Positions 8,771 through 55,907 of a stretch of DNA of 64,000 bases are shown here, in pieces; within the stretch, counting starts at the first letter, position 1, and each line of letters opens with the position of its first letter. A program made the position numbers and the translations under genes. A model generated the notes under the pieces. The model was not told the DNA's origin, searched no databases, and was given only the letters and a program-made list of their open reading frames with translations. Origin of the DNA: Phallusia mammillata (Eukaryota); the NCBI GenBank assembly GCA_965637545.1, contig OZ281495.1:20708001-20772000 (forward strand). The letters are read 5' to 3'.

Positions 8771-8787
8771 GTTTTGTTCTTCCTCGG

Positions 8788-9600: not shown

Positions 9601-9654
9601 TCTTGCTGTTTCTGTAGCGGTAACTTGTTTTACGGGGTCGGGTTGCTGGCCCGA

Positions 9655-31543: not shown

Positions 31544-31695
31544 ATTTGCATTGAAATTTGTGCAAATTGTGCAATGTTTCTATGAACCGATATTCCTTAA
31601 ATGTTTAGTGTAAACCTGTAAAACCAAATAAAACAATGTCCGTGGTAGTATTTTTGTTTTTTCATGCGATGGTCAAATAAGTTAGCTGACCAATT

Positions 31696-32991
31696 TCAAT
31701 CGCACAAATAAGACAACCAAAGAGCCACGGCGTCTGATATTAGATTAGGATTGGCATGAATATCCTTTTGTGGATGCACTGTTGTTAATCCCCACGTATC
31801 AATAAATGTCAAATATTTTAGGTCTGACAGCATACCGAGCATTATTTGATTAAATCGGTACAAATGCCATTCTGTTGGACGAAACGGACTGGGCACCGTG
31901 TATCTTATTCCTAAGCGAACGAAAACTTTGACGTTATGGTTTCGTCGCTTCAAACGATGCAGGGCATCTTTAATGATGGCCGAAAGACGTTCTACAAAAA
32001 TCAAAGGGTCGTAATAATCAAAATGGGCACCGATATGAAACACCACAACAACATTGCCTTGTTCAGTTATATTGTCTAAAGTTTTCACAATGTACGGTTT
32101 GACACGGGGTGGTCCCGGGTTTTGCAAAGGAAGTCCGTGTGCTCTGTACTTGATTGTGATGTTTCTCAGTCGATTTTTCCCGTTTCGTGGTTGTGACCAA
32201 AGATCACTTCTGTCTGCATCATCTGTCAATTTAAGTTTTTCGAATAATATCATGTACCACTGGCGCATTGTAGAGTCCCCGATGATGTAAATCTGCTTAT
32301 TAGGGAGGCACTTATCAGCAAGGGTCAAATCACGATGCGTGTTTTTGCATTCCAATGAATTCCACTTTTCATTGCGATAAAATCCACTGGGTACCAACAA
32401 TTCATTTACTTGCTTTCGGTTGATCGTCTTACATTGTTGCAAGTTTTGAGCAAATGACGTTTTGTTTACCTCAGTTTTGAGCAAAACTTTATTTTTGATC
32501 GCAATTTCTCTGTTGAGTTTTGTGTTAAACAGCTCCTTGCACTCTGGGTGTTGCAGTTTTGCCTCAGTTCTTTGGTACCATTGCATTTCTTTGGGGCATG
32601 TTTCGTTAGTCGGGCGATAGCAAAACCATGTTGTTCCAAACGATTGGTTTGAAAAATCACAGAGCAGTTTATCATTTTCCCTAACAAAAAAAACAAGTAA
32701 ATATTAGTTGTCAAAATCAAAATGCAATATCTGACTTACATTAGTTTTACGTCGCACTCTTCCTTGGTACCAGACGGATACGTTCCAATACACAACAAGG
32801 GGTCTATTGTACTTGCTTGCATGATCAGGTCGATGACAGCTTCACTGGAATGTACAAGCTCCACTTCTAATTTGCTTAAACCGGGCCATGTTATCACGGT
32901 TCGCCAAGTATATCTTCCATTTCCATGATCGTGAATGGATACAGGCACTCCGTCGCCCGTTTTTAATCCTTGCGAATTCAAACAAGCAAGT
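31696..32991 (-). pseudogene. NXPE-family copy 2: exons 2-3 open, exon 1 missing
   Basis: Exons 32991-32740 and 32680-31696 are in frame with GDS and KDIH intact. Upstream is cut by the duplication junction at 33155, and no TM exon was found. Confidence 0.8.
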
Positions 32992-33154
32992 CTGTTTTGG
33001 AAGCAAAATGTCGTTAAATATTATCTTTGCAGCAATAGTACCTGACAGAAATCTTTTTTAGTGCACGTGTCTCTAAATCACAATCAACAACCATGATCGC
33101 CTTAAAATGGCACCAATGTGGTAAAACTACTAACACTGAGCATTGGCTTACGCC

Positions 33155-36100
33155 CGCTTTTACAATGCAGGTCAAGGTTATCTTTCTTTTAATGACTGCT
33201 TACGTCATGAATGCCCGTGTTTAGCCAACCAATACAATAGTAGTCTCTACTCTCTGATTAGACATTAGAAAATAAGATGGGAATCCAAGTGTGTGTTTCA
33301 GGAGTGACATACAGCAAGTGCACCATTGGAGTAGTTTTAAATGTTTAATATTGTTATTTGAAAAGTGGAAACCAGTTTACGACAGTAAGGGAAAGTGCAT
33401 GAAAGTGGAAAAACGCTTCTAAGCTATTGTAAGAATCCAAGTCAAACTAATGTTGTCTGGTAAATTGCATCGCCAATGCTGTTGGAGGACTTCACTTTTA
33501 ACTATTTGTATTTCGCTTAATATGTTAGTAATAATCCTAATCTTGAAACCTTAATAACTACGTTATGAAAAATCAGGACAATGTCCAATTCTGTTAGTTT
33601 GTGGCAAAACAGCCCCTGTTCAGTAAATAAGTGGATTTTTATTCGCCAAGTAAATGTTCGAGTGAAAATAGAAAACCCTGAATAGGCAATAGGTGCGTAT
33701 GTTTACGGCAAACAACACAAATCGCCAGTAGTATTTTGATTTCATGGGACACCATATAAAACTTTGGTAAATATTGGTTAATGAAATTAAACAACACATC
33801 GTTTTACAGCAGCGGTTCCCAAACTGGGGTCCGCGGTCCTTTAGGGGTCCGTGAGGCAATTTTGGGGGGGACCGCGAAGCGGTTGAAGTAATTCTATAAT
33901 CTTATTTGGCGTCAGTTTGTGCCACTAAATAAGTTTAAATCAAAGTAGAATTGAGAATCGACTGTCTCGATTGCTAAACAATGGCCTTTATTGAATGACA
34001 ACTAAAAAAATGCAATTGTTCGCGCACAATCGTAATGTTTTTGTCCTGTTTGTGATGTCACATGCTGTCTTTGGATGATTATTATGCGCAATTTTGCACA
34101 ACTAGCTAAAATCCTGCAATAAACTTTCGTTTTTATGAAATACACATTTAGGCTTAAGGACCGCGAGCCCTTGAAATAATGGCAAGGGGACCGTTTAGAA
34201 AAAAATATGAAAAAGTTTGGGAACCACTGTTTTACAGCCAGGTAATGTTGATTTTGGAACTTACTTCTTTTCGGGTACTGGACAGGAAATGAAGTTTCCA
34301 GTTATTTGTTACGGTACACAAACAAACGGTCCTGCACGGCCATTCAAATATTCTACTTACCAAATTAATGCAGTTCGGCTAATAAAGTGACTTATACAGC
34401 TGTATAATATACGTTCTCCTGCTAGTTTTGTAAAAAAAATGTTTGACGGGATTTTTGGCGTTAAACAATTTTTGTTTGGCGCTTTTTTGTTGTGGTTGGC
34501 GCTTTTTTGGGAGTTGTTGGCACTTTTCAGCAATTTTTTTTGCAACTGGCGGTTTGGAGGATAATTTTGTAAAATCTGGCGGTTTATAGAGCTGGTTGAC
34601 ACCCAAGTCATTTCTTTGGCGTTTTTGTTTTTTTTAATGAACGTTTGGGCATCGTTTGTCAAAGGGTTATCTTTTTGACCCAACAAAATCTAGGTTAGAT
34701 TCATTAGCTGCGCTTTTACAATGCAGGTCAAGGTTATCTTTCTTTTAATGACTGCTTACGTCATGAATGCCCGTGTTTAGCCAACCAATACAATAGTAGT
34801 CTCTACTCTCTGATTAGACATTAGAAAATAAGATGGGAATCCAAGTGTGTGTTTCAGGAGTGACATACAGCAAGTGCACCATTGGAGTAGTTTTAAATGT
34901 TTAATATTGTTATTTGAAAAGTGGAAACCAGTTTACGACAGTAAGGGAAAGTGCATGAAAGTGGAAAAACGCTTCTAAGCTATTGTAAGAATCCAAGTCA
35001 AACTAATGTTGTCTGGTAAATTGCATCGCCAATGCTGTTGGAGGACTTCACTTTTAACTATTTGTATTTCGCTTAATATGTTAGTAATAATCCTAATCTT
35101 GAAACCTTAATAACTACGTTATGAAAAATCAGGACAATGTCCAATTCTGTTAGTTTGTGGCAAAACAGCCCCTGTTCAGTAAATAAGTGGATTTTTATTC
35201 GCCAAGTAAATGTTCGAGTGAAAATAGAAAACCCTGAATAGGCAATAGGTGCGTATGTTTACGGCAAACAACACAAATCGCCAGTAGTATTTTGATTTCA
35301 TGGGACACCATATAAAACTTTGGTAAATATTGGTTAATGAAATTAAACAACACATCGTTTTACAGCAGCGGTTCCCAAACTGGGGTCCGCGGTCCTTTAG
35401 GGGTCCGTGAGGCAATTTTGGGGGGGACCGCGAAGCGGTTGAAGTAATTCTATAATCTTATTTGGCGTCAGTTTGTGCCACTAAATAAGTTTAAATCAAA
35501 GTAGAATTGAGAATCGACTGTCTCGATTGCTAAACAATGGCCTTTATTGAATGACAACTAAAAAAATGCAATTGTTCGCGCACAATCGTAATGTTTTTGT
35601 CCTGTTTGTGATGTCACATGCTGTCTTTGGATGATTATTATGCGCAATTTTGCACAACTAGCTAAAATCCTGCAATAAACTTTCGTTTTTATGAAATACA
35701 CATTTAGGCTTAAGGACCGCGAGCCCTTGAAATAATGGCAAGGGGACCGTTTAGAAAAAAATATGAAAAAGTTTGGGAACCACTGTTTTACAGCCAGGTA
35801 ATGTTGATTTTGGAACTTACTTCTTTTCGGGTACTGGACAGGAAATGAAGTTTCCAGTTATTTGTTACGGTACACAAACAAACGGTCCTGCACGGCCATT
35901 CAAATATTCTACTTACCAAATTAATGCAGTTCGGCTAATAAAGTGACTTATACAGCTGTATAATATACGTTCTCCTGCTAGTTTTGTAAAAAAAATGTTT
36001 GACGGGATTTTTGGCGTTAAACAATTTTTGTTTGGCGCTTTTTTGTTGTGGTTGGCGCTTTTTTGGGAGTTGTTGGCACTTTTCAGCAATTTTTTTTGCA

Positions 36101-37650
36101 ACTGGCGGTTTGGAGGATAATTTTGTAAAATCTGGCGGTTTATAGAGCTGGTTGACACCCAAGTCATTTCTTTGGCGTTTTTGTTTTTTTTAATGAACGT
36201 TTGGGCATCGTTTGTCAAAGGGTTATCTTTTTGACCCAACAAAATCTAGGTTAGATTCATTAGCTGCGCTTTTACAATGCAGGTCAAGGTTATCTTTCTT
36301 TTAATGACTGCTTACGTCATGAATGCCCGTGTTTAGCCAACCAATACAATAGTAGTCTCTACTCTCTGATTAGACATTAGAAAATAAGATGGGAATCCAA
36401 GTGTGTGTTTCAGGAGTGACATACAGCAAGTGCACCATTGGAGTAGTTTTAAATGTTTAATATTGTTATTTGAAAAGTGGAAACCAGTTTACGACAGTAA
36501 GGGAAAGTGCATGAAAGTGGAAAAACGCTTCTAAGCTATTGTAAGAATCCAAGTCAAACTAATGTTGTCTGGTAAATTGCATCGCCAATGCTGTTGGAGG
36601 ACTTCACTTTTAACTATTTGTATTTCGCTTAATATGTTAGTAATAATCCTAATCTTGAAACCTTAATAACTACGTTATGAAAAATCAGGACAATGTCCAA
36701 TTCTGTTAGTTTGTGGCAAAACAGCCCCTGTTCAGTAAATAAGTGGATTTTTATTCGCCAAGTAAATGTTCGAGTGAAAATAGAAAACCCTGAATAGGCA
36801 ATAGGTGCGTATGTTTACGGCAAACAACACAAATCGCCAGTAGTATTTTGATTTCATGGGACACCATATAAAACTTTGGTAAATATTGGTTAATGAAATT
36901 AAACAACACATCGTTTTACAGCAGCGGTTCCCAAACTGGGGTCCGCGGTCCTTTAGGGGTCCGTGAGGCAATTTTGGGGGGGACCGCGAAGCGGTTGAAG
37001 TAATTCTATAATCTTATTTGGCGTCAGTTTGTGCCACTAAATAAGTTTAAATCAAAGTAGAATTGAGAATCGACTGTCTCGATTGCTAAACAATGGCCTT
37101 TATTGAATGACAACTAAAAAAATGCAATTGTTCGCGCACAATCGTAATGTTTTTGTCCTGTTTGTGATGTCACATGCTGTCTTTGGATGATTATTATGCG
37201 CAATTTTGCACAACTAGCTAAAATCCTGCAATAAACTTTCGTTTTTATGAAATACACATTTAGGCTTAAGGACCGCGAGCCCTTGAAATAATGGCAAGGG
37301 GACCGTTTAGAAAAAAATATGAAAAAGTTTGGGAACCACTGTTTTACAGCCAGGTAATGTTGATTTTGGAACTTACTTCTTTTCGGGTACTGGACAGGAA
37401 ATGAAGTTTCCAGTTATTTGTTACGGTACACAAACAAACGGTCCTGCACGGCCATTCAAATATTCTACTTACCAAATTAATGCAGTTCGGCTAATAAAGT
37501 GACTTATACAGCTGTATAATATACGTTCTCCTGCTAGTTTTGTAAAAAAAATGTTTGACGGGATTTTTGGCGTTAAACAATTTTTGTTTGGCGCTTTTTT
37601 GTTGTGGTTGGCGCTTTTTTGGGAGTTGTTGGCACTTTTCAGCAATTTTT
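33155..37650. repeat. 1556-bp tandem repeat, about 2.9 units, ending at the right hAT TIR (37654-37664)
   Basis: Identical ORFs at 33620, 35176 and 36732. The left TIR is absent because the array starts at the duplication breakpoint. Confidence 0.95.
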
Positions 37651-39282
37651 ATCTGGCAACCCTGCTCTTTATCCATATTGAGGTTTGTCACGATTACAGT
37701 TTGTTGTTTACTCTATTTGACATGTTTAAAGCCGAAATTAATACCGAACTTCAACACGAGTTTGCCATTTATATTTTTTTGCAGGAGGGTCACAGATCTT
37801 ATACACTGTTATTCAAAGGGGCCATGAGGCCAAAAATATACTTTAAGGGGGCCACGGTCCATGAAAGGTTGAGAACCACTGTGCTAGTTTGTTGTCTCTG
37901 TTTTCTGTATTTTACCAATGCTTTTGGTGCTTTATAAGAACTTTATGTTTCGAGATATGTCATTATCCTGATGAAGGCATTTTGTACGTGACGTCGAAGC
38001 GTCGGTTGTTTACATTTAAACTGCTTGAAGAGCAATACTTGTTTGTATACATTATGGTAATTAGCATCAGCTTATTTACTTAATCTGTGTGATGGCAACA
38101 GTACAGCGCGGCTATATAGCACAATACACGTGTTGGACAGCTCACTAAAGACTAGTCCAATAATTTAATTAAAGCACATATTGGCTTACTCGCACCACTG
38201 TACATAAAATGTTTTTGTTGCTGTTCTGCGTATACCGTAAAAGTTTTTTCCGTATTCAAGCTAATAAAAAACTTCCCTTCTGCCAACTCTGGTGAAAGTG
38301 TGTATAGCAGTGGTTCTCAAACTTTTATAATGTCGGTGCCAAATGGCAGTTTTTAAAGCTAAAATAGCAATCTTTAGTGGTTTGCTGAGGTCTGTTGCGA
38401 CTTGTGAGCCGCAAAATAAGTTGTTGGGAGCCTCATGCGGCCCTGAGAGCCGCGTTTTGGTTTTTATTCCGCTGATTTTATCAAAGTTAAACTGCCTGTA
38501 ACTAACATATATGCTACCTGAAATATTCAGTAGAATAAAAAGACATTCATAAAAATTTGAGGGGCGACATACATTTTACTGACATCGTAAATTAGAAACC
38601 GAAAGGAAACTCGCTGCGTGGCACAAGTGACGTGATTTTAGAGTGCGTGAAAAAGTTTGCTGGTTTCTATTGCGATCCGATATCAGCCTATAACATTTTC
38701 TACATGGAGCGCTTACAGATTACGCAGTTTGAAACTCTGAAATTAGGTACAATACAGGGTCAGTTAACGGTGTTTGTCAGTGAAATGCGTTGTTCAAATG
38801 GCTCTAATTTTTGTTACACTTCTAATTGCCACATGGAGTTTAACCAATGTAAATGCATGGAGTTTTTTTCATTTCGTTTTGACTTTCAGTCTTGTGACGT
38901 AATAAAAATTTACCGTTGCTGCTCAAACACGAACGTCTGTTTTAACGTATGTCTTTAAAAATGATTTCTTAGTTTATGAAAAAAAGTCCACAACATTACA
39001 GTTTCAATAAACGTTAAATTCATTGCTTTTGTTACTAAAGTCACAACAGGAATTTTAAGACTGTCATCTTACCAGAGACATTTAACTTTCGACTATTAAT
39101 GACGACGAAATTCAACTCACGAATACAGTAGCTTTTTGAATAACAAAAAATGACAAGCAGCACTCATGGTTCCAATGCTGTTGTCGCATTTCGTGGATAA
39201 AGACATATGTACTTGAACATGCTTACACGCCACTCGGTTTTTAAGATTGGTCTTTTCAATGTAAGTAAGATTCACAGAGTTG

Positions 39283-41102
39283 TTACTCATCATCCCAACC
39301 AAAATTTTTTCCAATATTCTCGAAAAATTCTTCATTAAACGGGCGATAAAACGCCGGCAATTTTTTTTAAAGTTACCCAGTTGGCTTTCTGCTTTCCGTT
39401 GCGCGTGCGGCCTTTTGAACTTTTAAGACAATCCAACTGTTTAACATTTTCTATGCTGCTTTCATTTACTTTGTGCTCGAGATGCTGGGTGGTAAATTTT
39501 TGGTAACAAAAGAATCCGGTGTCTGGATGGCGAACAAAATCCTCTCGCAACAAGACTTTTGGAATTCCAATAAAATCCTTCAGTTCCTCAATTATTGGTC
39601 CTGGATCTTTAATGAATCGATCTCCATCTACAACTTTTAAACTTGAGCTGTTGAAGAAACTTTGACATTGTTTAATATGAGCTGAGTATATTCCATTGGA
39701 GAGTAGAGTTGATGCAAGGCTTGTGTGAACTAAGTTGACAAATTTTTCTCGCAAGTCCGAATGTAGAAGGGATATTTTTTGCCACTTAGATATGCTGTGT
39801 TGCAGTTTTGGAAGATAATATCAACACGCTGTTCGAATGTTTCGTATTTACTGATCAAATGATTATTGTAAAGCTCGTACCTTACACGCTGTGAACAAAA
39901 AAGTGGTTTAAATTATGATGCTATTTTCCGCGTATTAGTATTACATTTGCTGCTACTGATTTGTAACAAAAAAAGTATTATTTTAATCTATGTGCTACTG
40001 GTTGTACGAATAAGATATTTGTAATGATAAAACCCAAAATTGTTTTACCTCTTGGTTTTTATTTCTTCCATTATAATAATGCGACACATTACAGCAGCTT
40101 ATTTTACTTGTTATGTTTTTATAAACTCACCTCGTGCACATAATCTGAAAACGCTCTCAGGGTTGGATCACAGACGATTAAAATAAGCTTTACACCAGGA
40201 ATTGATGTTTTGATTCTGTATGGAATGTTTGTGGGTGGAAAAGCAAAATATATTGGTGTCTTTTCCATTGCAACTTGTCTATCGTTTGTCGGTGGCATCC
40301 CTTTTCTGCAAAACACAAATTCATTATTTACCACAATCAAAAAACAACAAATATTAAGAAGACATTGCAGTCAATAGTAGAAAAAACCACCTTTGATTTT
40401 ATTTATTAGTGCCACGAAAAGTTTTTTGAAAGGCTATATAGAAGGCGTATATAAACACTTTACGGGTAAGCATTTAAGTCTCCCATTTTCGCTAATGTGA
40501 AGAAGAACATTTCCTTTTCTTTGGGAACTCGAATTAGTGGATTTTGGTCAGGAAAGCCCAGTTTACCCTGGTACCACACTTTTTTACTCCAATGCCGATC
40601 ACTTTTGGTAAGCGCCGCGTTTCATTCTGCAAAACTTGGAAAATTTAATTCAACATGTCTTTAAAAAAATGCTTTTTAAACTGAATGCATCCGTTTACAC
40701 TTTGTAGCTACAAAAAAACGTAAAGTTCCCAACAAAAACATTGATTTTACAATTTGTTGAATGGTAGCAATTACAGCGGTGAGTAATTTCAATACACGCA
40801 AAACGCTTTGGTTACGCATAAATATCGGAAAATAACTTAATACGAATGAAAGCAACATAAAGGAGTACCTTAATATTTTCTGCGTTGAATCGTTTGATCT
40901 CCGTAAGTTGTTTTTCACGATTCATCAATTTGGTTCGCAAAGCTATGGCATTTCTAGCACCAAAAACAATTTTTCGGCTTACGCGATCTTCAAAAAAACT
41001 CTTTTTTGTGAATGCAATCAACAGCAAAATACACAAGATTCAGATGACGATATTTGTCAATCTTGAATGGAGTTTGCATCTTCTGATTTTTGAAGGGATC
41101 AT
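39283..41102 (-). pseudogene. HS3ST-like copy 4 (duplicate of copy 3, pseudogene)
   Basis: Matches 29724-31543 at offset 9559, including the same lesions. Confidence 0.85.
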
Positions 41103-41254
41103 ATTTGCATTGAAATTTGTGCAAATTGTGCAATGTTTCTATGAACCGATATTCCTTAAATGTTTAGTGTAAACCTGTAAAACCAAATAAAACAATGTCC
41201 GTGGTAGTATTTTTGTTTTTTCATGCGATGGTCAAATAAGTTAGCTGACCAATT

Positions 41255-42550
41255 TCAATCGCACAAATAAGACAACCAAAGAGCCACGGCGTCTGATATT
41301 AGATTAGGATTGGCATGAATATCCTTTTGTGGATGCACTGTTGTTAATCCCCACGTATCAATAAATGTCAAATATTTTAGGTCTGACAGCATACCGAGCA
41401 TTATTTGATTAAATCGGTACAAATGCCATTCTGTTGGACGAAACGGACTGGGCACCGTGTATCTTATTCCTAAGCGAACGAAAACTTTGACGTTATGGTT
41501 TCGTCGCTTCAAACGATGCAGGGCATCTTTAATGATGGCCGAAAGACGTTCTACAAAAATCAAAGGGTCGTAATAATCAAAATGGGCACCGATATGAAAC
41601 ACCACAACAACATTGCCTTGTTCAGTTATATTGTCTAAAGTTTTCACAATGTACGGTTTGACACGGGGTGGTCCCGGGTTTTGCAAAGGAAGTCCGTGTG
41701 CTCTGTACTTGATTGTGATGTTTCTCAGTCGATTTTTCCCGTTTCGTGGTTGTGACCAAAGATCACTTCTGTCTGCATCATCTGTCAATTTAAGTTTTTC
41801 GAATAATATCATGTACCACTGGCGCATTGTAGAGTCCCCGATGATGTAAATCTGCTTATTAGGGAGGCACTTATCAGCAAGGGTCAAATCACGATGCGTG
41901 TTTTTGCATTCCAATGAATTCCACTTTTCATTGCGATAAAATCCACTGGGTACCAACAATTCATTTACTTGCTTTCGGTTGATCGTCTTACATTGTTGCA
42001 AGTTTTGAGCAAATGACGTTTTGTTTACCTCAGTTTTGAGCAAAACTTTATTTTTGATCGCAATTTCTCTGTTGAGTTTTGTGTTAAACAGCTCCTTGCA
42101 CTCTGGGTGTTGCAGTTTTGCCTCAGTTCTTTGGTACCATTGCATTTCTTTGGGGCATGTTTCGTTAGTCGGGCGATAGCAAAACCATGTTGTTCCAAAC
42201 GATTGGTTTGAAAAATCACAGAGCAGTTTATCATTTTCCCTAACAAAAAAAACAAGTAAATATTAGTTGTCAAAATCAAAATGCAATATCTGACTTACAT
42301 TAGTTTTACGTCGCACTCTTCCTTGGTACCAGACGGATACGTTCCAATACACAACAAGGGGTCTATTGTACTTGCTTGCATGATCAGGTCGATGACAGCT
42401 TCACTGGAATGTACAAGCTCCACTTCTAATTTGCTTAAACCGGGCCATGTTATCACGGTTCGCCAAGTATATCTTCCATTTCCATGATCGTGAATGGATA
42501 CAGGCACTCCGTCGCCCGTTTTTAATCCTTGCGAATTCAAACAAGCAAGT
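41255..42550 (-). pseudogene. NXPE-family copy 3 (duplicate of copy 2), exon 1 missing
   Basis: Matches 31696-32991 at offset 9559. Upstream lie a palindromic MITE and the 3' end of the YR gene. Confidence 0.8.
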
Positions 42551-42690
42551 CTGTTTTGGAAGCAAAATGTCGTTAAATATTATCTTTGCAGCAATAGTAC
42601 CTGACAGAAATCTTTTTTAGTGCACGTGTCTCTAAATCACAATCAACAACCATGATCGCCTTAAAATGGCACCAATGTGGTAAAACTACT

Positions 42691-42885
42691 AACACTGAGC
42701 ATTGGCTTACGCCCGGTCTGAGAACTTCTGGTAGGTGGCGCAACAGAACATAGGCGTTTATGGTGCTGACTCATCAATTATTCTTACCATAAACCAAAAT
42801 TGCTGTAACAGCACCATAAACGCATATGCTCTGTTGCGCCACCTACCAGAAGTTCTCAGACCGGGCGTAAGCCAATGCTCAGTGT
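42691..42885. mobile_element. Palindromic (hairpin) MITE, probable TA TSD (Tc1/mariner-type)
   Basis: About 80-bp near-perfect inverted arms (acactgagcattggcttacgcccggtctgagaacttctggtaggtggcgcaacag... and its reverse complement), flanked by TA on both sides. Confidence 0.8.
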
Positions 42886-42985
42886 TAGTTGCTCTACCTA
42901 GGTTTTTCCTTTCTTTCAATCAGATCCTAAAAAAAAACATTTCATAATGACGTAATGTGCAACAATTGCCCATAGTAACACTAAT

Positions 42986-45900
42986 TTAAACAAGGCCAAA
43001 GTCTATTACAAACATTTGTGTAATTTTGTTTACTGCATGTATCTACTTTTTACAAATCTACATGACAATGACAAAGACTAATCTTGATATACCTTGTAAT
43101 TTCTTTCTTGGTGTGGCAGGTAAGGAAGAACTAGAGTTTCTGCGTGTTCTTTTGACTGGAGATTCTGAAACAAATAACAAACCGTTGATTTTTAAGTATA
43201 CTAGACTATTGAACGTTGGGTATAATTTTGAATCTGTTTGTGTTGTTTGTCCATTTTTACAGTGCAAAACATGTTGGTTAGAACTGGTTCATGTTTTATT
43301 TTTAAAAAACCCTCAGAACAGATATTTTTTATATGTAATATATAAGAGTGACAAACAGAAATATTATTTGTGAAAAATGTAATCTTTTATTAAAATAATG
43401 GTTGTTTATAAAGTTCGTCAATTCGAAATTGCAGCGTTAAGAACTTGTGATCAAAACACAACAAATTTTAGTGAAAAATTTCAACCTTGGAATTATAATG
43501 TCAAGCTGTAATATACCTAGTAATTTCTTGCTTGGTGTTGCAGCTGAAGCAGAATCTGAGTTTCTGCGTACTCGCTTGTTTGGAGATACTGGAACAAACA
43601 ACAGTTTTATTAAGTATGTTTCAGACACAAATAGACACCAGGTTTTCTCTATACAATTTACCTTCATAAGGGTTGACAACTTTTGCCTCATAAAAAAGGT
43701 GGTTCTGTGGCCATCTAGCATAAACAATGTCTCCAGGTTTAAGGTCATTGAGTGCTTTTACTTTTTTCCGATTTGACATTTTTATGTCCTTGGGGTGATA
43801 AATATAACATGTTAAATTGTCATCAACAAAGTCAACTTTGATGAATTCACGTTCTGCAAAGCATTGAAAAAAAGATACATCTTCAGTATTTTGTACTAAA
43901 ATGTTTAGTTTTAAAAGTAGAAACTGGTTGAATTTGACGATAGACTTACTTCTTATCATGCTACTAGCAGCAGACCATAAGCTATGAAAATCACAAATAA
44001 AACAAATCAAAAAATTACCCACCCATTTGTACTTGAGTGGTGTTGATAGATTCCGGTTCAACTTCGACGTCTACACCACCTGATGATTTATCAGTCACAG
44101 CACCATGTTTTCTTTGGCTGCTGGTCTCAGAACCTGAATAACATGTACATCTAAACCACATGTTACTAAATCACAATTAAAAAAAAAATTACCCACCCAT
44201 TTGTACTCGAGTGGTGTTGATAGATTCCGGTTCAACTTCGACGTCTACACCACCTGATGATTTATCAGTCACAGCACCATGTTTTCTTTGGCTGCTGGTC
44301 TCAGAACCTGAATAACATGTACATGAAAACCACATATTACTTACCTTGTCAAATCCCCCAATACCTTTTGGTCCACTTAATGTAGTTGCAATGTTCTGGG
44401 TAGCCTCTATTCAACAAAATACACAAGGTGATTACTGGAAAGGTTATTGCAACATTTGACTACTTTTTAACAGTGCACATAGTTACCATTTACCAAGTTC
44501 TAACGAATGCGCTTTTCTGTTTGTGTGACAAAATTATATGCAAAATTTGCCACAAAACATAACAGTCACAATGCTGGGAAGCATGTTGTCTACCACACCA
44601 AAAAAAGAAACAAGACTTTCTAAAACCAGTCCAAAATTTTGTTTCAAGACACACAAGACATAACCACCTGATGCTAATCCACCCAATACAATCCGTGCTG
44701 ATTCCACTATTTTCGCTGGGTTGGTAATGTCGTAAAATTTATCCTGAACTTCAACTGAATGGCCTTCAGCCCTTGCCACAGCTCTTTGTATATCTCTCGG
44801 TTTGTCACTAATTTCCCTAGCTATCAGTTTCCTAGTTTCAGTAACTGTGACCGGTCTTTCAAAGCATCTTGCAGTTACTTCCTTGTATATGTGGTTAAAT
44901 TGAGAGGGTGTCATTTTTACTCCAACTTTATTTCCAAAAAATGATGGAAACATCCTTTCTTCAATATTCACCCCCAACTTTTGCAAATATGTCCAGATAG
45001 TTGCAAAGCATCATCGTATTCGGATTTTGAAAATACAATACAACCATGCCGCCTCTTCTCTTTCTGTTCACTGACTAAAACTGAAAAGTATCCACCAGAT
45101 GTAATTTCTCGATTTTTGAATTCAGTTTTCAGCATACCAGTGAGAAGAGATGATCTGCACCCTTGGTGACAGATCAGTCTGGCAAACAAATCACCAGAGA
45201 GTAATTTTAGTTCAGCACATGAAAGTGAACCAGTTTTTTTCTGTCGCATGGCCTCCATCTTTTTAGCATTTTTCTGTGTGTATTCAAGAATCACTTTTCC
45301 AGGAAAGCTGCATCCCGAAAGTAATCTCCTTGATTTATCCTTCATAAACACTTCTCTTTTTTCTTTTTTCGTTCTCTGTCGTTGCATCCATTCTTTCACA
45401 TACTTTTTCAGTCTTTCAATTTTATATTCCTCATAAACATTCTCAAATTGCAAGTGCAAAAATTGCAGAAAGTTGTTAATAGTTGCCAAATAGGCATACA
45501 ATGTTGATGCACTTCCATCTTTACAAACTTTTTTGGATAAATTTGAATATATAGTTTTTGGATACTTGAAGTCGTCTAAACATGTGATCACAGATTTTAT
45601 TTGATTTACATATGTTTGTGCCTGGGTAGTTGTTGTTTTATTCCGGTTTCCACTTCCCATAGTTACCAAAGCATTTTGATATGTATCCAATATGTCATTT
45701 AGGACATAACTGATTTTACTTCTATTTATGATATCGTTGAACGTTTTGGAGCCTTTTTGTATCTCTTTGTGTTTGTGAGCAATGTGGCTTTTTATGCCCA
45801 AAACTATTAACTTGCAAATACAGCATTGGTAGCCAGAAAAGTTTTTGTAACTACCCAACCTTCTGCGTTTCGCAAAACTATCATAATAAAAATCTTCCTT

Positions 45901-48900
45901 TGGAATATCCATATGTTTTTTTCCTATGGTGCGTCACATTTGTGTATGTTTCATGGCAGAATGGACATACTCTTCTTTTTCTGGATGAACCAGACCTAAA
46001 AGTGAAAATATGTATGTTGCACTAACCATTTACTTTCTTTAATACTAAAGTGATATTTGTAACACATCTAAAAGCACACAAAGTACAAGATTGGTTCAAA
46101 ACAATAAATATTAACCCTACAGAAGAAAGCTGGAGGTTGGAAGAGGGCAATTGCTAATATGCACTTAAAAAAAAGTTACTTTGTTTTTAAAATTTTAAAA
46201 TAAGTCCACAAAAACATAGTTAAACATTTCACAACTTACTTTTGGGTTGATGGCGATCGACTTGCAGGGGTTGAGACTCTGCTTTGCACAGCTCTGCGAC
46301 TGTATGACTTTTTCCTTTTAAAAAAGTAAAATTATTATTAATTTAGTTATTGTTTGTCATTAGTTAGGTTTATCTAAACAGTATTACCTATGGGTTGATG
46401 GTGATCGACTTGCAGAGGTTGAGACTCTGCTATGCACAGCTCTGCCGCTGTAGTGTGACTTTTTCCTTTAAAAAAAGTAAAATTATTATTAACTTAGTTA
46501 TTGTTTGTCATTAGTTAGGTTTATCTAAACAGTATTACCTATGGGTTGATGGTGATCGACTTGCAGAGGTTGAGACTCTGCTATGCACAGCTCTGCCGCT
46601 GTAGTGTGACTTTTTCCTTTAAAAAAAGTAAAATTATTATTAACTTAGTTATTGTTTGTCATTAGTTAGGTTTATCTAAACAGTATTACCTATGGGTTGA
46701 TGGTGATCGACTTGCAGAGGTTGAGACTCTGCTATGCACAGCTCTGCCGCTGTAGTGTGACTTTTTCCTTTAAAAAAAGTAAAATTATTATTAACTTAGT
46801 TATTGTTTGTCATTAGTTAGGTTTATCTAAACAGTATTACCTATGGGTTGATGGTGATCGACTTGCAGAGGTTGAGACTCTGCTATGCACAGCTCTGCCG
46901 CTGTAGTGTGACTTTTTCCTTTAAAAAAAGTAAAATTATTATTAACTTAGTTATTGTTTGTCATTAGTTAGGTTTATCTAAACAGTATTACCTATGGGTT
47001 GATGGTGATCGACTTGCAGAGGTTGAGACTCTGCTATGCACAGCTCTGCCGCTGTAGTGTGACTTTTTCCATTTAAAAAAGTAAAATTATTATTAATTTA
47101 GCTATTCTTTGTCATTAGTTAGGTTTATCTAAACCAGTGGTTCTCAAAGTATGGGTCGCGACCCAAACATGGGTCGCGCAGGGTCCAAAAATGGGTCGTG
47201 CTATGTGTGATTCAGTTCTGCCCAAACAAACTATTACTGCATTCAGTAAACACAAACGAATTTACTTAATGCAGAAATAAAGTCGCCTCACTCTAATAAG
47301 TTGTACAGTAAAATGAACCAATTATTACAACATACAGACAATAGCTTTCTAATTTTATTGTTACGCACATGGCGATTGTAACGTCATAGCACGGGAAATA
47401 ATAGGACAAGTTAATCTTGCATAACTGAACGGGAGATGTAACAGTTAGTGTTAAAGGATGTGTAAGTATTCCTACAAGTAAACATTTTTAGATTTGGGAT
47501 TCACTTCTATCAGTGATCATGGCGCTGCAAACCCACAATGTGTGTTATGCAATTGTCGAACGAATCGGCTTCGACCTCATTAGGCCTGCCGCCAATTTGA
47601 CATGCTGGGCAGACTCCTATGCGGCGGCGAAAATTGCAGTCCGTCTCGTTAATACATTTTTTGATGTTTGAGGCTTGGGTCGTGAGATGTTCATAAAACC
47701 CAGATTTGGGTCGCGGTTAAAAAAGTTTGAGAACCACTGATCTAAACAGTATTACCTATGGGTTGATGGTGATCGACTTGCAGAGGTTGAGACTCTGCTA
47801 TGCACAGCTCTGCCGCTGTAGTGTGACTTTTTCCTTTTAAAAAAGTAAAATTATTATTAATTTAGCTATTCTTTGTCATTAGTTAGGTTTATCTAAACAG
47901 TATTACCTATGGGTTGATGGTGATCGACTTGCAGAGGTTGAGACTCTGCTATGCACAGCTCTGCCGCTGTAGTGTGACTTTTTCCTTTTAAAAAAGTAAA
48001 ATTATTATTAATTTAGTTATTCTTTGTCATTAGTTAGGTTTATCTAAACAGTATTACCTATGGGTTGATGGTGATCGACTTGCAGAGGTTGAGACTCTGC
48101 TATGCACAGCTCTGCCGCTGTAGTGTGACTTTTTCCTTTTAAAAAATCAAAATTATTATTAATTTAGTTGTTGTTTGTCATTAGTTAGTTATTTCTTAAC
48201 AGTATTACCGGTAAGTTGATGGCGATCGACTTGCAGAGGTTGAGACTCTGCTTTGCACAGCTCTGCGACTGCAGTGTGACTTTTTTCTTTAAAAAAATTA
48301 AAATTGTTATTAATTTAGTTATTGTTTGTCATTAGTTTATTATTTCTGTACAGTATTACCTAAGATGGGTTGATGGCGATCGATTTGCAGAGGTTGAGAC
48401 TCTGCTTTGCACAGCTCTGCGACTGTAGTGTGACTTTTTTCTTTTAAAAATTTAAAATTGTTATTAATTTAGTTATTGTTTGTCATTAGTTGATTATTTC
48501 TAAACAGTATTACCTACGATGGGTTGATGGTGATCGACTTGCAGAGGTTGAGACTCTGCTTTGCATAGCTCTGCCGCTGTAGTGTGACTTTTTCCTTTTA
48601 AAAAATCAAAATTATTATTAATTTAGTTGTTGTTTGTCATTAGTTAGTTATTTCTAAACAGTATTACCTAAGACTGGTTGATGGCGATCGACTTGCAGAG
48701 GTTGAGACTCTGCCTTGCACAGCTCTGCGGCTGTAGTGTGACTTTTTGCTTAAAAAAATCAAAATTATTATGAATTTAATTGTTGTTTGTCATTAGTTAG
48801 TTATTTCTTAACAGTATTACCAGTAAGAGGATGGCGATCGACTTGCAGAGGTTGAGACTCTGCGGCTGTAGTGTGACTTTTTTCTTTTAAAAAAGTAAAA

Positions 48901-50111
48901 TTGTTATTAATTTAGTTATTGTTTTTCATTAGTTAGTTATTTCTTAACAGTATTACCTAAGACGGGTTGATGGCAATCAACTTGCAGAGGTTGAGACTCT
49001 GCTTAGCACAGCTCTGCGGCTGTAGTGTGACTTTTTTCTTTTAAAAAAATTAAAATTGTTATTAATTTAGTTATTGTTTGTCATTAGTTTATTATTTCTG
49101 TACAGTATTACCTATGGGTTGATGGCGATCGACTTGCAGAGGTTGAGACTCTGCTTTGCACAGCTCTGCGGCTGTAGTGTGACTTTTTGCTTCAAAAAAT
49201 CAAAATTATTATTAATTTAGTTATTGTTTGTCATTAGTTAGTTATTTCTAAACAGTATTACCTAAGACTGGTTGATGGCGATCGACTTGCAGAGGTTGAG
49301 ACTCTGCCTTGCACAGCTCTGCGGCTGTAGTGTGACTTTTTGCTTAAAAAAATCAAAATTATTATGAATTTAATTGTTGTTTGTCATTAGTTAGTTATTT
49401 CTTAACAGTATTACCTAAGATGGGTTGATGGCGATCGACTTGCAGAGGTTGAGACTCTGCTTTGCACAGCTCTGTGGCTGTAGTGTGACTTTTTGCTTCA
49501 AAAAATCAAAATTGTTATATATTAATTTAGTTGTTGTTTGTCATTAGTTAGTGATTTCTTAACAGTATTACCTAAGATGGGTTGATGGCGATCGACTTGC
49601 AGAGGTTGAGACTCTGCTTTGCACAGCTCTGCCGCTGTAGTGTGACTTTTTCCTTTTTTGCAAATGAGAAGGATGTTTGTCCGAAGAGATTGGTTTGACA
49701 CCACTTATCCCTTCGCAATCCTTCTGTGATCTTTTTCATTGAAGTGCAAATGTTGGAAACAAACAAAACAAAACTAATGATGTTGAATCCATTAAAATTA
49801 AATTATAATGAATGCATTTGTGATTATCTTTTAATAACACTAGTTGTCAAAAATATCTAACATGCCTTACCCCAAGCATGAATCATTTTCAGAGGAATCA
49901 AAGTTAATGCATCGTTTGCTTTGACTGAATCTACAAAACACATTAACTGATATATAAAACAGTAATATCGTGCAAAGAGCAAAACAAAGTTGGACGCCAT
50001 ATTGTTTGTTGGTCATGCTGTAAGGCATATGACTACATGTTTAATGTGGCTTTAATTGAATTCTTTTCTGTAAAATTCTTACCCAGAAGCCAAATCTTCA
50101 TTCGCTTCCAT
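42986..50111 (-). CDS. Multi-exon gene: Ser/Arg-rich exon-repeat array + 2 C2H2-like zinc fingers + tyrosine recombinase + Tudor-like domain; frameshifted, possibly a dead Crypton-like or unclassified YR element
   Basis: The model starts ATG 50111 (exons 50111-50083, 49930-49871, 49730-49572), passes through 18 further repeat exons, then 45995-44665 (ZnF+YR), a small exon near 44345-44406, 44307-44197, 44133-44023, 43853-43662 (Tudor), 43588-43517, 43164-43093, and a tentative last exon 43032-42986. Two frameshifts: an A7 run at 45916-45922, and about 45000. Confidence 0.7.
43662..43853 (-). CDS. Tudor-like exon of the YR gene
   Basis: FIKVDFVDDNLTCYIYHPKDIK...LKPGDIVYARWPQNHLFYEAKVV resembles the Tudor consensus (G-D-x-V-x-A-R-W...F-Y-x-A-x-V). 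Phase 1-1 exon with ttgcag/gtaaat splice sites. Confidence 0.65.
44665..45995 (-). CDS. Zinc-finger + tyrosine recombinase exon (two frameshifts)
   Basis: CPFCHETYTNVTHH..H and CCICKLIVLGIKSHIAHKH zinc fingers. YR catalytic pattern: R in ICHQGCRSS (45154-45156), K in VSEQK, TETRK in place of HxxR, GHS, and Tyr in QDKFYD (44732-44734). Confidence 0.75.
46240..49730 (-). repeat. Tandem array of 19 exon+intron units (~151 bp)
   Basis: Each unit is an exon of 63, 75, 78 or 81 nt plus an intron of 72-76 nt (gtaata...ctaac/ctaat...ttttaaag), except the MITE-bearing intron. Phase 2-2 translation is RKKSHYSGRAV(H/Q)SRVSTSASRSPSTH. Confidence 0.9.
47135..47739 (+). mobile_element. hAT MITE (family B) inserted in an intron of the exon array
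   Basis: TIRs cagtggttctcaaa / tttgagaaccactg; TSD atctaaac; homologous to 55427-55907 in the opposite orientation. Confidence 0.92.
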
Positions 50112-50736: not shown

Positions 50737-52053
50737 GGGCGACGGAGTGCCAGTGTCGATTTACGATCATGGAAATGGAAGATATACTTGGCGAACCGTG
50801 ATACCATGGCCCGGTTTAAGCAAATTAGAAGTGGAGCTTGTACATTCCAGTGAAGCTGTCATGGACCTGATCATGCAAGCAAGTACAATAAACCCCTTGT
50901 TGTTTATTGGAACGTATCCGTCTGGTACCAAGGAAGAGTGCGACATGAACTAATGTAAGTCTGATGTACACCGTTCACTTTAATTGTTAAAAATACTAAA
51001 AATCGATTGTTATCTTGGAAAGGCCAAATGTTGCTTTTATGTTTGACGAGTAAAAATCAATTGATTTTTTAGTAACAAAGATAAAATGCTCTGTGACTTT
51101 TCAAACAAGACGCTTGGAACGACATGGTTTTGCTATCGCTCGAACAACCAAACATGTCCGAAAGAAATGCTTTGGTACCAGAGAACTGAGGAAAAATTAG
51201 AACACAATGAGCGCAATGAGCTGTTTGACACAACTCTGAACAGAGAAATTGTCATACCAAATCAAGTTCGACTCAAAACCGAGTTCAGCAAAGGATTTTA
51301 CACTCAAAGTTTGCAACAACATGAGACGGTTTACCCAAAGCAAATAAAACTTCTGTCGCTTCCTAGTGGTTTTTATCTCAACGGAAAATGGAATTCTTTT
51401 CAAATCAAAAACACGCATCGTGACTTAACCCGTGCTGATAAGTGCCTGGCTAACAAACGTATTTACCTCATCGGGGACTCGACGATGCGTCAGTGGTACC
51501 TAATATTATTCGAAAAACTCCAATTGACTGATGACGTAGACGGAAGTGATCTTTGGTCACAACCACGAAATGGTAACAATCGAATGAAAAACATCACAAT
51601 AAATTACAGAGCACACGGACTTCCTTTGCAAAACCCGGGACCTCCTCGTGTCAAACCTTACATTGTAAACACTTTGGACGAAATAACTGAACAAGGCAAT
51701 GTTGTTGTGGTGTTTCATATCGGTGCACATTTTGATTATTACGACCCTTCAATTTTTATTAAACGTCTTTCGGCCATTAAAATTGCCCTAAATCGATTAA
51801 AGCGACGAAACCATGACGTCAAAGTTTTCGTTCGCTTAGGAATAAGATACACGGTGCCCAGTCCGTTTCGTCCAACAGAATGGTATTTGTACCGATTTAA
51901 TCAAATAATTCTCGGTATGCTGTCAGACATGAAGTATTTGACATTTATTGATACGTGGGGATTAACAAAGTGCATCCACAAAAGGATATTCATGCCAAGC
52001 CTGATCTTTTATCGGACGCTGTCGCTCTTTGGTTGTCTTATCTCTGCAATTAA
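50737..52053 (+). pseudogene. NXPE-family copy 4 (5'-truncated, frameshifted)
   Basis: Begins abruptly inside exon 2 (gggcgacggagtg). There is a 1-bp deletion at the end of exon 2 and another just before KDIH. Exon 3 starts at 51073 and the original-frame stop is at 52051-52053. Confidence 0.85.
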
Positions 52054-52110
52054 CTTTGTGCCTTGTTTAGGGAAGGGCTTTTATTTATACTGTTTTTTGA
52101 TGTCTTAAAC

Positions 52111-55426: not shown

Positions 55427-55907
55427 CAGTGGTTCTCAAACTTTTTTGACCGCGTCCCAAATCTAAGTTTTATGAACATCTCACGACCCACGCCTCAAAC
55501 ATCAAAAAATGTATTAACGAGACGGAGGGAAATTTCGAGGCCACGTCGTCGCCGCATGGGAGTCTGCCCATGTCAAAATGGCTGCAGACTTAACGAGGTC
55601 GATTCCTTCGATAACACTGCATAACACAACACACATTGTGGCTTTGCAGCACTATGATCATTGATAGAACTGAATCCCAATTCTAAAAATGTTTCAATCG
55701 CACTGTGCAGTAAAGTAACAGTTGGTTCTGTTTAATGTACAACGTGGTCGAGTGAGGTGACTTTACTACTACATTAAGTAAATTCGTTTGTGTTTCCTTA
55801 ATGCAGTAATAGTTCGTTTGGTCAGCATTGAATCAGCACAGCGCGACCCATTTTTTGACCCTGCGCGACCCATGTTTGGGTCGCGACCCATACTTTGAGA
55901 ACCACTG
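55427..55907 (-). mobile_element. hAT MITE family B, copy 2
   Basis: TIRs cagtggttctcaaa / tttgagaaccactg; TSD ctgtatgc. Confidence 0.9.

What the first reader, a model, noticed from the sequence alone, without database searches (positions are those of the whole stretch)
42986..50111. Intron-rich tyrosine-recombinase gene with zinc fingers, a Tudor domain and an N-terminal repeat array: candidate undescribed YR element or domesticated recombinase
Seen in sequence: a spliced minus-strand model links ATG 50111 through 19 Ser/Arg repeats to two C2H2-like fingers, a YR catalytic set (R..K..TxxR..H..Y) and a Tudor-like exon. Established: animal YR elements are mainly DIRS/Ngaro (with RT) and Cryptons (YR without RT, some with introns), and Tudor domains read methyl-Lys/Arg. 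Inference: I know of no described ZnF-YR-Tudor architecture. It could be a chromatin-targeted recombinase element, by analogy with chromodomain integrases. Two frameshifts mean this copy is dead or has assembly indels. No termini were identified.
Basis: partly seen in the sequence, partly recalled or inferred. Interest (0 to 1): 0.85.

Follow-up and report, generated by a model that had tools for sequence, protein, structure and literature searches.

The report
Broken ascidian zinc-finger/Tudor tyrosine recombinase gene
This is a real but broken copy of a 28-exon gene from an undescribed sea-squirt family that joins a Cre-like DNA recombinase to two zinc fingers, a Tudor-like domain and a Ser/Arg repeat array; whether the family is a transposon or a tamed host gene is still open.

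Summary
A minus-strand model of 28 exons (50111 to 43058) has AG/GT at every junction but one and compatible phases throughout. It is open except for one in-frame stop in repeat unit 5 and two frameshifts in the 1328-nt main exon.

The 151-bp "satellite" is 19 exon-plus-intron units. Exon lengths are 81, 78, 75 or 63 nt, all multiples of three. Intron lengths are 72-76 nt.

Homologues with the same layout (Ser/Arg repeats, two fingers, recombinase, linker repeats, Tudor-like domain, basic tail) occur in Clavelina lepadiformis, Ciona intestinalis and C. savignyi. A search of 1.84 billion representatives gave only 27 hits. All hits with a recorded source organism are ascidian.

No Pfam, PHROG or PDB sequence profile recognises the recombinase. 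A predicted structure of the Ciona homologue matches Cre, Xer and lambda integrase at probability 1.0. The candidate catalytic residues R, K, T-x-x-R, H and Y are invariant in the family. The window's Tudor exon folds like the KDM4A and ARID4 Tudor domains.

There is no reverse transcriptase nearby, so it is Crypton-like rather than DIRS/Ngaro, but with domains that animal Cryptons lack. This copy is probably dead. Transposon versus domesticated gene is unresolved, because no termini or copy number could be obtained. The scan had separately noted the repeat array (s1-361522).

The parts
50083..50111 (-). Exon 1: ATG at 50111, 29 nt, donor GTAAGA
   Evidence: It reads MEANEDLASG and leaves 2 bases, in phase with exon 2.
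49871..49930 (-). Exon 2: 60 nt, AG acceptor, GTAAGG donor, Ser-rich
46240..49652 (-). Array of 19 exon-plus-intron units (period 151-154 bp) encoding about 495 aa of Ser/Arg/His/Lys-rich 25-27-aa repeats. One unit has an in-frame stop (49037-48957). One unit has a mutated acceptor (at 47069).
   Evidence: All exon lengths are multiples of 3 and the intron lengths are not. The last donor (AAAA|GTAAGT at 46240) joins in phase to the finger exon.
47135..47739 (.). 605-bp hAT-like MITE inserted in one repeat intron. It has CAGTGGTTCTCAAA inverted ends and an 8-bp target duplication GTTTAGAT (47127-47134 and 47740-47747).
   Evidence: A related copy lies at 55427-55907.
44668..45995 (-). Main exon, 1328 nt. 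It encodes zinc finger 1 (CPFC...HH), zinc finger 2 (CCIC...H..H), the core-binding domain and the recombinase catalytic domain. Frameshift 1 is in the A7 run at 45916-45922. Frameshift 2 is within 44986-44998.
   Evidence: It is 37-53% identical to ascidian homologues, and R, K, T-x-x-R, H and Y are present.
44341..44406 (-). Linker exon, 66 nt. The GTAATA donor keeps the phase; the stronger GTAAGT donor 4 nt upstream would not.
44023..44307 (-). Two 111-nt exons within a 174-bp tandem repeat (44307-44197 and 44133-44023) encoding GAVTDKSSGGVDVEVEPESINTT-type linker repeats
   Evidence: The counterparts are the 293-bp exon-plus-intron repeats in Clavelina and the exon-internal 27-nt repeats in Ciona.
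43662..43853 (-). Tudor-like domain exon
   Evidence: Pfam gives sub-threshold SGF29_Tudor (E 1.4e-4) and LBR_tudor (3e-4) hits. The AF2 model has pLDDT 81.5. Foldseek's best hits are the KDM4A/B/C hybrid Tudor and ARID4A/B double Tudor domains, with TM 0.60-0.63 and probability 1.0. The exon is 34-41% identical to the homologues' C-terminal domains.
43517..43588 (-). Basic, Ser-rich tail exon (SPNKRVRRNSDS...TPSKK)
   Evidence: It matches the tails of P0003, P0004 and P0047.
43058..43164 (-). Duplicated tail exon (80% identical to the previous one, 424 bp away), running to the TAG stop at 43058-43060
   Evidence: (family D5).

Best explanation
The locus is an inactivated copy of a gene from a previously undescribed family that so far appears confined to ascidians.

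**Encoded protein (about 1,180 aa in concept)**
- It starts with a disordered Ser/Arg-rich N-terminus built from tandemly duplicated symmetric exons.
- Next come two C2H2-like beta-beta-alpha fingers.
- A Cre/Xer-type two-domain tyrosine recombinase follows, carrying R, K, T-x-x-R, H and the tyrosine nucleophile.
- A repeated linker, a Tudor-like domain and a basic, probably nuclear-localising, tail complete the protein.

**Origin.** The family encodes a recombinase without a reverse transcriptase. It therefore most likely descends from, or still is, a Crypton-type DNA element.

**Inferred mechanism for intact members (not shown here)**
- The fingers and the core-binding domain recognise DNA sites.
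- The recombinase cuts and rejoins DNA through a 3'-phosphotyrosine intermediate, as Cre does.
- The Tudor-like domain tethers the enzyme to modified chromatin.

**This copy.** It cannot make that protein. Two frameshifts put the middle third of the main exon in another frame, separating the first Arg and the Lys from the T-x-x-R, His and Tyr. One repeat exon carries a stop.
For: **Gene model and homologues**
- The model is open and phase-consistent over 28 exons.
- The same architecture appears in P0004 (Clavelina, CAK8672443), P0003 and P0047 (Ciona intestinalis) and P0050 (C. savignyi).
- The Clavelina locus L001 has the same exon plan: small Ser/Arg exons, one large finger-recombinase exon, exon-plus-intron linker repeats, a Tudor exon and a tail exon.

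**Recombinase**
- The AF2 model of P0047 has pLDDT 75.
- Its best Foldseek PDB matches are Cre, XerA, lambda integrase, Tn1549 integrase and XerH, at probability 1.0 and E about 2e-5.
- Against Swiss-Prot models the best matches are XerC and XerD, at E about 3e-7.
- The candidate catalytic residues are invariant in every member that covers them.

**Other domains and context**
- The Tudor-like fold is supported.
- The only RT in the 64 kb belongs to an RTE about 35 kb away.

**Signs of a selfish or dispensable element**
- This copy is broken.
- The Clavelina copy has an in-frame stop at L001:17916-17918 that the annotation bridges with an intron.
- Ciona has at least three lineages less than 50% identical to one another.
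- One ENA assembly (ERZ25067590) holds copies on four contigs, at least three of which look like distinct loci. The copies are 98-99.6% identical over more than 10 kb. Their ORFs are intact, with pN/pS of 0.17-0.58.
Against: **Against a mobile element**
- No termini, target-site signature or second copy were found in the window.
- At 90% clustering each Ciona lineage is a single sequence.
- The finger region is 87% identical between C. intestinalis and C. savignyi.
- Intron positions around the Tudor and tail exons are shared across three lineages.
- These four points look more like vertically inherited host genes.

**Weak links in the classification**
- There is no sequence-level link to Crypton, DUF3504, DUF3435 or Phage_integrase profiles.
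- The multi-copy blocks in ERZ25067590 have no resolved boundaries, include other transposon fragments and may be segmental duplications.

**Uncertain details**
- Frameshift 1 sits in a homopolymer and could be an assembly error.
- The His of the canonical H-x-x-R is Thr throughout the family. Catalytic competence is therefore unproven.
Confidence: 0.55

Rival explanations
1. The family is a domesticated host gene family: a chromatin-associated recombinase or DNA-binding factor retained by ascidians. The window holds a pseudogenised paralogue of it.
For: - Each Ciona lineage is a single sequence at 90% clustering.
- The C. intestinalis and C. savignyi counterparts are 87% identical over the fingers.
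- The genes are intron-rich, with intron positions shared across lineages.
- NCBI models include isoforms.
- In Ciona the gene sits compactly next to ordinary host genes, a methyltransferase and a fucosyltransferase.
- The accreted Ser/Arg, Tudor and basic-tail modules are typical of nuclear chromatin proteins.
- pN/pS is below 1 among near-identical copies.
Against: - The copies examined in two of the species are broken.
- No NXPE synteny was found between the window and the Clavelina locus.
- One genome assembly carries several near-identical copies.
- Known Crypton domestications (DUF3504) lost the catalytic residues, whereas here all are kept (PMC3212892).
Confidence: 0.33
2. The gene is intact and functional in the animal, and the frameshifts are assembly errors.
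For: - Frameshift 1 is one extra base in an A7 run, a typical long-read error.
- The two shifts cancel, so the exon length has the correct residue modulo 3.
- Every other exon is open.
- The stop-bearing repeat exon is symmetric and could be skipped.
Against: - Frameshift 2 (44986-44998) is not in a homopolymer. Compared with homologues it looks like a loss of several codons plus one base.
- There is also an in-frame stop and a mutated acceptor in the array.
- Two random shifts cancel about half the time.
Confidence: 0.15
3. The 151-bp array is a non-coding satellite that happens to lie upstream. The true gene starts at the finger exon or at ATG 45912.
For: - The exon-like and intron-like parts are equally diverged.
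- Eight units are 100% identical, showing recent unequal crossing-over.
- Two frames are open.
- Several homologues (P0002, P0028, P0048, P0003) have no such N-terminal array in their models.
Against: - All 19 exon lengths are multiples of 3, while the intron lengths are not.
- 18 of 19 units have AG and all 19 have GTAA.
- The Ser/Arg frame joins both exon 2 and the finger exon in phase.
- Clavelina and C. savignyi homologues carry analogous Ser/Arg-rich N-terminal repeats. In Clavelina they are encoded by about 72-nt exons.
Confidence: 0.12

Closest known systems
Crypton DNA transposons (CryptonA/CryptonI of animals; Goodwin 2003; Kojima and Jurka 2011, PMC3212892)
   Same: A eukaryotic tyrosine recombinase is the only enzyme, with no reverse transcriptase. 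There are no terminal inverted repeats. The family is low in copy number and hard to delimit. The 2011 paper lists Crypton 'molecular fossils' in Ciona, and these may or may not belong to this family.
   Different: Animal Cryptons are stated to have no C-terminal domain. Here there are two fingers, a Ser/Arg exon array, linker repeats, a Tudor-like domain and a basic tail. No termini or mobility were shown. No profile-level similarity to the Crypton-derived Pfam families was found.
DUF3504 genes (ZMYM2/3/4, QRICH1, KCTD1, KIAA1958, WOC), which are domesticated Crypton recombinases
   Same: A recombinase-derived domain is fused to zinc fingers or other nuclear modules inside intron-containing host-like genes.
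   Different: DUF3504 lacks most of the catalytic tetrad, whereas this family keeps R, K, R, H and Y. There is no PF12012 hit. The fingers are not MYM-type. This family has so far been found only in ascidians.
DIRS, Ngaro, PAT and VIPER tyrosine-recombinase retrotransposons
   Same: They are eukaryotic recombinase-encoding mobile elements.
   Different: They need RT and RNase H (and a methyltransferase in DIRS) plus characteristic terminal repeats. None of these is present here.
Cre, XerC/D, XerA and lambda integrase (prokaryotic tyrosine recombinases)
   Same: They share the two-domain core-binding plus catalytic fold, with the Lys in the beta-hairpin, Arg at the start of a helix, and His nine residues before the Tyr.
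   Different: Sequence identity is only 10-16% and no sequence profile matches. Thr replaces the first His. Large eukaryote-type accessory domains are present.
Chromodomain integrases of chromoviruses (Ty3/Gypsy)
   Same: They are an analogy only. A Royal-family methyl-lysine reader fold sits at the C-terminus of a DNA-integrating enzyme and could steer target choice.
   Different: No binding data exist for this family.
KDM4A/B/C hybrid Tudor and ARID4A/B interdigitated double Tudor domains
   Same: These are the best structural matches to the window's 68-aa exon, at TM 0.60-0.63, rmsd 2.2-2.7 A and 24-28% identity. The G-x-x-x-x-A-x-W...[FY]-x-A motif is conserved.
   Different: Only about one Tudor-sized unit is present. 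Pfam scores are below threshold. An aromatic cage has not been verified.

Membership tests
Tyrosine recombinase superfamily | Two-domain core-binding plus catalytic fold | tested here: met
   The AF2 model of homologue P0047 (33-35% identical to the window pieces) matches Cre, Xer and lambda integrase at Foldseek probability 1.0.
Tyrosine recombinase superfamily | Catalytic R-K-H-R-H/W-Y residues | tested here: inconclusive
   R, K, R, H and Y are invariant in the family and present in the window pieces, but the first His is Thr in all members. The three-dimensional clustering of these residues was not inspected.
Tyrosine recombinase superfamily | Match to the Phage_integrase sequence profile (PF00589) or to the sequence of a solved recombinase | tested here: not met
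   There was no hit in Pfam, in PHROGs, or in the PDB by single sequence or by profile.
Crypton DNA transposon | The recombinase is the only enzyme, with no RT, RNase H or methyltransferase | tested here: met
   No other enzymatic ORF lies between the flanking NXPE genes. The only RT in the window is an RTE at 7-9.7 kb.
Crypton DNA transposon | Multiple copies sharing precise ends, short direct repeats and evidence of mobility | tested here: inconclusive
   The window has a single copy and no termini. ERZ25067590 has 98-99.6% identical copies on four contigs, at least three of which look like distinct loci, but their boundaries are unresolved. A genome-wide search of this species was not possible.
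Crypton DNA transposon | Phylogenetic placement among the CryptonA, I, F and S recombinases | not testable with these tools
   No Repbase Crypton sequences were available. AFDB cluster hits to metazoan finger-recombinase proteins and language-model neighbours carrying DUF3435 or DUF3504 are leads only.
DUF3504 domesticated Crypton genes | PF12012 match together with loss of catalytic residues | tested here: not met
   There is no PF12012 hit at E up to 1, and the catalytic residues are retained.
DIRS/Ngaro retrotransposons | RT and RNase H adjacent to the recombinase, plus terminal repeats | tested here: not met
Tudor (Royal family) domain | Barrel-like beta fold resembling solved Tudor domains | tested here: met
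   The model of the window exon has pLDDT 81.5. The top 18 PDB hits are all KDM4 or ARID4 Tudor domains, with TM 0.56-0.63. The alignment behind the model is shallow (5 rows).
Tudor (Royal family) domain | Pfam gathering threshold and a methyl-lysine aromatic cage | tested here: inconclusive
   SGF29_Tudor scores 22.4 bits against a cut-off of 23.8, and LBR_tudor 20.9 against 22. The conserved W52 and F58 could form a cage, but this was not verified.
C2H2 zinc finger | C-x2-C...H-x3-5-H pattern with a beta-beta-alpha fold | tested here: inconclusive
   The pattern is present twice. The model shows beta-beta-alpha at residues 20-40 and 68-88 of P0047. Pfam zf-C2H2_4 reaches only E 0.06-0.26, and the Cys-to-His spacing is shorter than the classical one.

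The most novel reading that the evidence does not exclude
Ascidians keep a domesticated, catalytically active site-specific recombinase. Its zinc fingers and histone-reading Tudor-like domain would direct it to particular chromatin, so it would be a host-controlled programmed DNA rearrangement or inversion enzyme in a chordate. The window copy would be a decayed paralogue lying between two inverted NXPE genes.
Probability: 0.1. Interest if true: 0.9.

Novelty: new variant of a known kind. Interest (0 to 1): 0.6.

Why it matters
Eukaryotic recombinase-only elements (Cryptons) are rare and poorly understood. In animals they were described as lacking accessory domains.

This family would give them, or their domesticated descendants, a new architecture. 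It couples a recombinase whose catalytic residues are all retained (apart from a family-wide His-to-Thr change) to DNA-reading fingers and a chromatin-reader fold.

That suggests chromatin-guided target choice by a tyrosine recombinase, parallel to the chromodomain integrases. It also offers intact candidates in Ciona, a tractable model, for testing recombinase activity in a chordate.

The work also shows two other things. A sequence-orphan recombinase can be recognised only at fold level. And an apparent satellite can in fact be a coding exon-plus-intron array.

Tried and rejected
**Profile and sequence searches**
- Pfam, PHROG and PDB searches on the window pieces and on intact homologues gave no recombinase, DUF3504 or DUF3435 hit.
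- Two homologous-protein searches added little beyond C. savignyi H2YFX6 and one more ENA protein.

**Copy number and termini**
- A search for a second copy or termini in the window found none.
- I first took L003:13122 to be a shared right end of the ERZ25067590 copies. The junction sequences showed that only L003 diverges there, so I withdrew the claim.
- Walking upstream (L006) met a non-LTR fragment and gave no boundary.

**Other checks**
- No NXPE genes were found near the Clavelina locus, so there is no synteny signal.
- No Ser/Arg arrays were found upstream of the ENA or Ciona P0003 loci.
- Exon and intron parts of the array showed no difference in divergence.
- Literature searches for Crypton with tunicate, Tudor or C2H2 found no description of this family.
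- The scan's own notes showed no other copy in this genome.
- I considered whether the NXPE inverted repeats flanking the gene are FLP- or DIRS-like recombination arms. I rejected this because the arms are host gene copies.


Full report
**Setting**

The window is animal DNA with about 36% G+C. The finding lies between two head-to-head NXPE4-like genes. One is at 41255-42540 on the minus strand and the other at 50738-52108 on the plus strand. Their copies form inverted-repeat arms at 41250-42517 and 50737-52058. No assembly gaps are present.

**Checking the observation**

*The main exon.* On the minus strand, a 314-aa ORF (44968-45912) and a 150-aa ORF (44534-44986) overlap in different frames. 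A CPFC...HH finger upstream is in the same frame as the second ORF.

*The repeat array.* The 151/154-bp tandem array at 46236-49656 resolves into 19 units. Each unit has a G+C-richer segment bounded by AG and GTAA[TG], followed by an A+T-rich segment of 72-76 nt.
- The bounded segments are 81, 78, 75 or 63 nt long. At least four independent indels are all multiples of three.
- The A+T-rich segments vary by 1 and 4 nt.
- Two frames are open. Only the Ser/Arg-rich frame connects in phase with the 60-nt exon 2 and the ATG exon at 50111, and also with the finger exon (acceptor at 45996-45997, first base 45995).

*Downstream exons.* All have AG/GT boundaries and compatible phases: a 66-nt linker exon, two 111-nt exons within the 174-bp repeat, the 192-nt Tudor exon, and two copies of a tail exon.

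*Result of in-silico splicing.* The 5' part gives 549 codons with one stop, in repeat unit 5. The 3' part gives 326 codons with only the terminal stop.

*The two frameshifts.* The first is in the A7 run at 45916-45922 and the second within 44986-44998. They compensate, so the exon length modulo 3 is what an intact exon needs.

*Other features of the array.* A 605-bp MITE with an 8-bp target duplication sits in one repeat intron. Exon-like and intron-like parts are equally diverged. Constraint is therefore shown by indel lengths, splice signals and phase, not by substitution rate.

**Relatives**

An exhaustive phmmer search of 1.84 billion representatives with the 314-aa piece found only 27 proteins, the best at 38-49% identity.

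The named hits are ascidian:
- Ciona intestinalis XP_078494979 (P0003), XP_018672075 (P0006) and XP_026695240 (P0005).
- Clavelina lepadiformis CAK8672443 (P0004).
- Ciona savignyi H2YFX6 (P0050) appeared later.

P0004 (840 aa), P0003 (812 aa) and P0047 (625 aa) show most or all of it, and the partial P0050 shows its N-terminal part. The order is Ser/Arg-rich N-terminal repeats (in P0004 and P0050), two fingers, recombinase, a repetitive linker, a Tudor-like domain and a basic tail.

The genomic loci agree with this:
- In Clavelina (L001) the N-terminus is built from roughly 72-nt exons. The finger-recombinase region is one large exon. The linker is a 293-bp exon-plus-intron repeat. The Tudor and tail parts are separate exons.
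- In Ciona (L007) the linker repeats are exon-internal 27-nt units.

The layout is therefore conserved, while the repeats turn over in each lineage.

**Fold evidence**

No sequence profile recognises the recombinase. Pfam, PHROGs and the PDB, queried by single sequence and by family profile, are all blank.

*Recombinase.* The AF2 model of P0047 was built on a 17-row family alignment that included the window pieces. Its mean pLDDT is 75, and above 90 over most of residues 140-420.
- In the PDB its best Foldseek matches are Cre, Tre, XerA, lambda integrase, Tn1549 integrase and XerH, at probability 1.0 and E about 2e-5.
- In Swiss-Prot models the best matches are XerC and XerD, at E about 3e-7.
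- In AFDB clusters the best hits (E down to 6e-16) are uncharacterised eukaryotic proteins named "C2H2-type", "Core-binding domain" or "Tyr recombinase domain". Several alignments begin at the fingers. This suggests a wider metazoan finger-recombinase group.
- The ESM Atlas gives the same picture.
- Candidate catalytic R294, K325, T399-x-x-R402, H426 and Y435 (P0047 numbering) are invariant in all members covering them, including both window pieces. They sit where the model has the beta-hairpin and helices expected of Cre-type enzymes. I inferred this placement from secondary structure and did not inspect the coordinates.

*Tudor-like exon.* The window's own Tudor exon was modelled on a 5-row alignment and reached pLDDT 81.5. 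Its top 18 PDB matches are all KDM4A/B/C hybrid Tudor or ARID4A/B double Tudor domains, with TM 0.56-0.63 and 22-28% identity. This agrees with the sub-threshold Pfam SGF29_Tudor and LBR_tudor hits.

**What kind of thing is it**

There is no reverse transcriptase, RNase H or methyltransferase in or next to the gene. DIRS, Ngaro and PAT are therefore excluded, and the nearest known kind is a Crypton or a Crypton-derived gene.

Kojima and Jurka (PMC3212892) state that animal Cryptons have no C-terminal domain and no terminal repeats. They list only "molecular fossils" in Ciona. DUF3504 genes have lost the catalytic residues, whereas this family keeps them and has no PF12012 match. I found no paper describing this architecture.

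**Element or host gene**

*For a selfish or dispensable element:*
- The window copy is broken.
- The Clavelina copy has an in-frame stop that the annotation skips.
- Ciona carries at least three lineages less than 50% identical to one another.
- One ENA assembly (ERZ25067590) has copies on four contigs, at least three of which look like distinct loci. They are 98-99.6% identical over more than 10 kb. Their 436-aa ORFs are intact and the downstream 1.7-kb tandem array varies in length. pN/pS is 0.17-0.58, but on few substitutions.

*For a host gene:*
- Each Ciona lineage is a single sequence at 90% clustering.
- The finger region is 87% identical between the two Ciona species.
- Intron positions are shared across lineages.
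- The Ciona locus sits compactly among ordinary genes.

Boundaries in ERZ25067590 could not be resolved, and my first reading of a shared right end was wrong. No synteny with Clavelina was seen. I could not search the rest of this species' genome. I therefore rate element-like at about 0.55, domesticated family at about 0.33, and other readings for the rest.

**State of this copy**

Frameshift 1 could be a homopolymer error. Frameshift 2 is not in a homopolymer and, against the homologues, looks like a loss of a few codons plus one base. Together with the stop in unit 5 and one mutated acceptor, the copy is most likely a pseudogene (about 0.75-0.8).

**Mechanism**

*Shown:* the fold, the conserved residues and the domain order.

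*Inferred:*
- Intact members bind DNA through the fingers and the core-binding domain.
- They recombine DNA through a phosphotyrosine intermediate.
- The Tudor-like domain and basic tail bring them to the nucleus and to modified chromatin.
- The Ser/Arg array is a disordered, probably phospho-regulated region.

**Verdict**

The locus itself is a dead copy. The interest lies in the family, which is a new variant of the Crypton-type recombinase theme.

Noticed in passing
window 24981-33156 and 34540-42715: An 8.2-kb tandem duplication at 99.99% identity, with a period of 9559 bp. It includes an NXPE4-like gene and internal 1556-bp tandem repeats (24981-28091 and 33155-37650). It is either a very recent duplication or an assembly artefact, and it ends at 42715, just short of the recombinase gene's 3' end.
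   Followed up: partly
window 19813-21073 (-), 31696-32981 (-), 41255-42540 (-), 50738-52108 (+): A cluster of four NXPE4-like genes (Pfam NXPE4_C, E down to 1e-49). The last two are head-to-head and form inverted-repeat arms of 82-95% identity around the recombinase gene.
   Followed up: partly
window 47135-47739; related copy at 55427-55907: A 605-bp hAT-like MITE with CAGTGGTTCTCAAA terminal inverted repeats and an 8-bp target-site duplication GTTTAGAT. It is inserted in an intron of the repeat array.
   Followed up: partly
window 42679-42898: A 220-bp near-palindrome with 101-nt arms (91% complementary) and an 18-nt loop. It lies between the NXPE upstream exon and the recombinase gene's 3' end. 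The breakpoint of the 9.6-kb duplication falls inside its left arm.
   Followed up: no
window 7026-9723 (-): Non-LTR (RTE-type) retrotransposon ORFs, with RVT_1 at E 1.6e-33.
   Followed up: no
window 14418-15125 (+) and 16061-16630 (-): Two sulfotransferase-domain ORF fragments in opposite orientation.
   Followed up: no
L001 (Clavelina lepadiformis CAUIVY010000123.1) 17916-17918 and 14734-15903: The annotated protein CAK8672443 skips an in-frame stop in the recombinase exon by means of a modelled intron, which removes finger 2 and part of the core-binding domain. An intron of the gene also holds a non-LTR endonuclease fragment on the opposite strand.
   Followed up: partly
L002-L005 (ENA ERZ25067590), from about position 11819 onwards: A 1.7-kb tandem array lies directly downstream of the recombinase ORF. 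Its copy number varies from about 1 to at least 6 among otherwise 98-99.6% identical copies. Its function is unknown, and no Tudor exon was detected there.
   Followed up: partly
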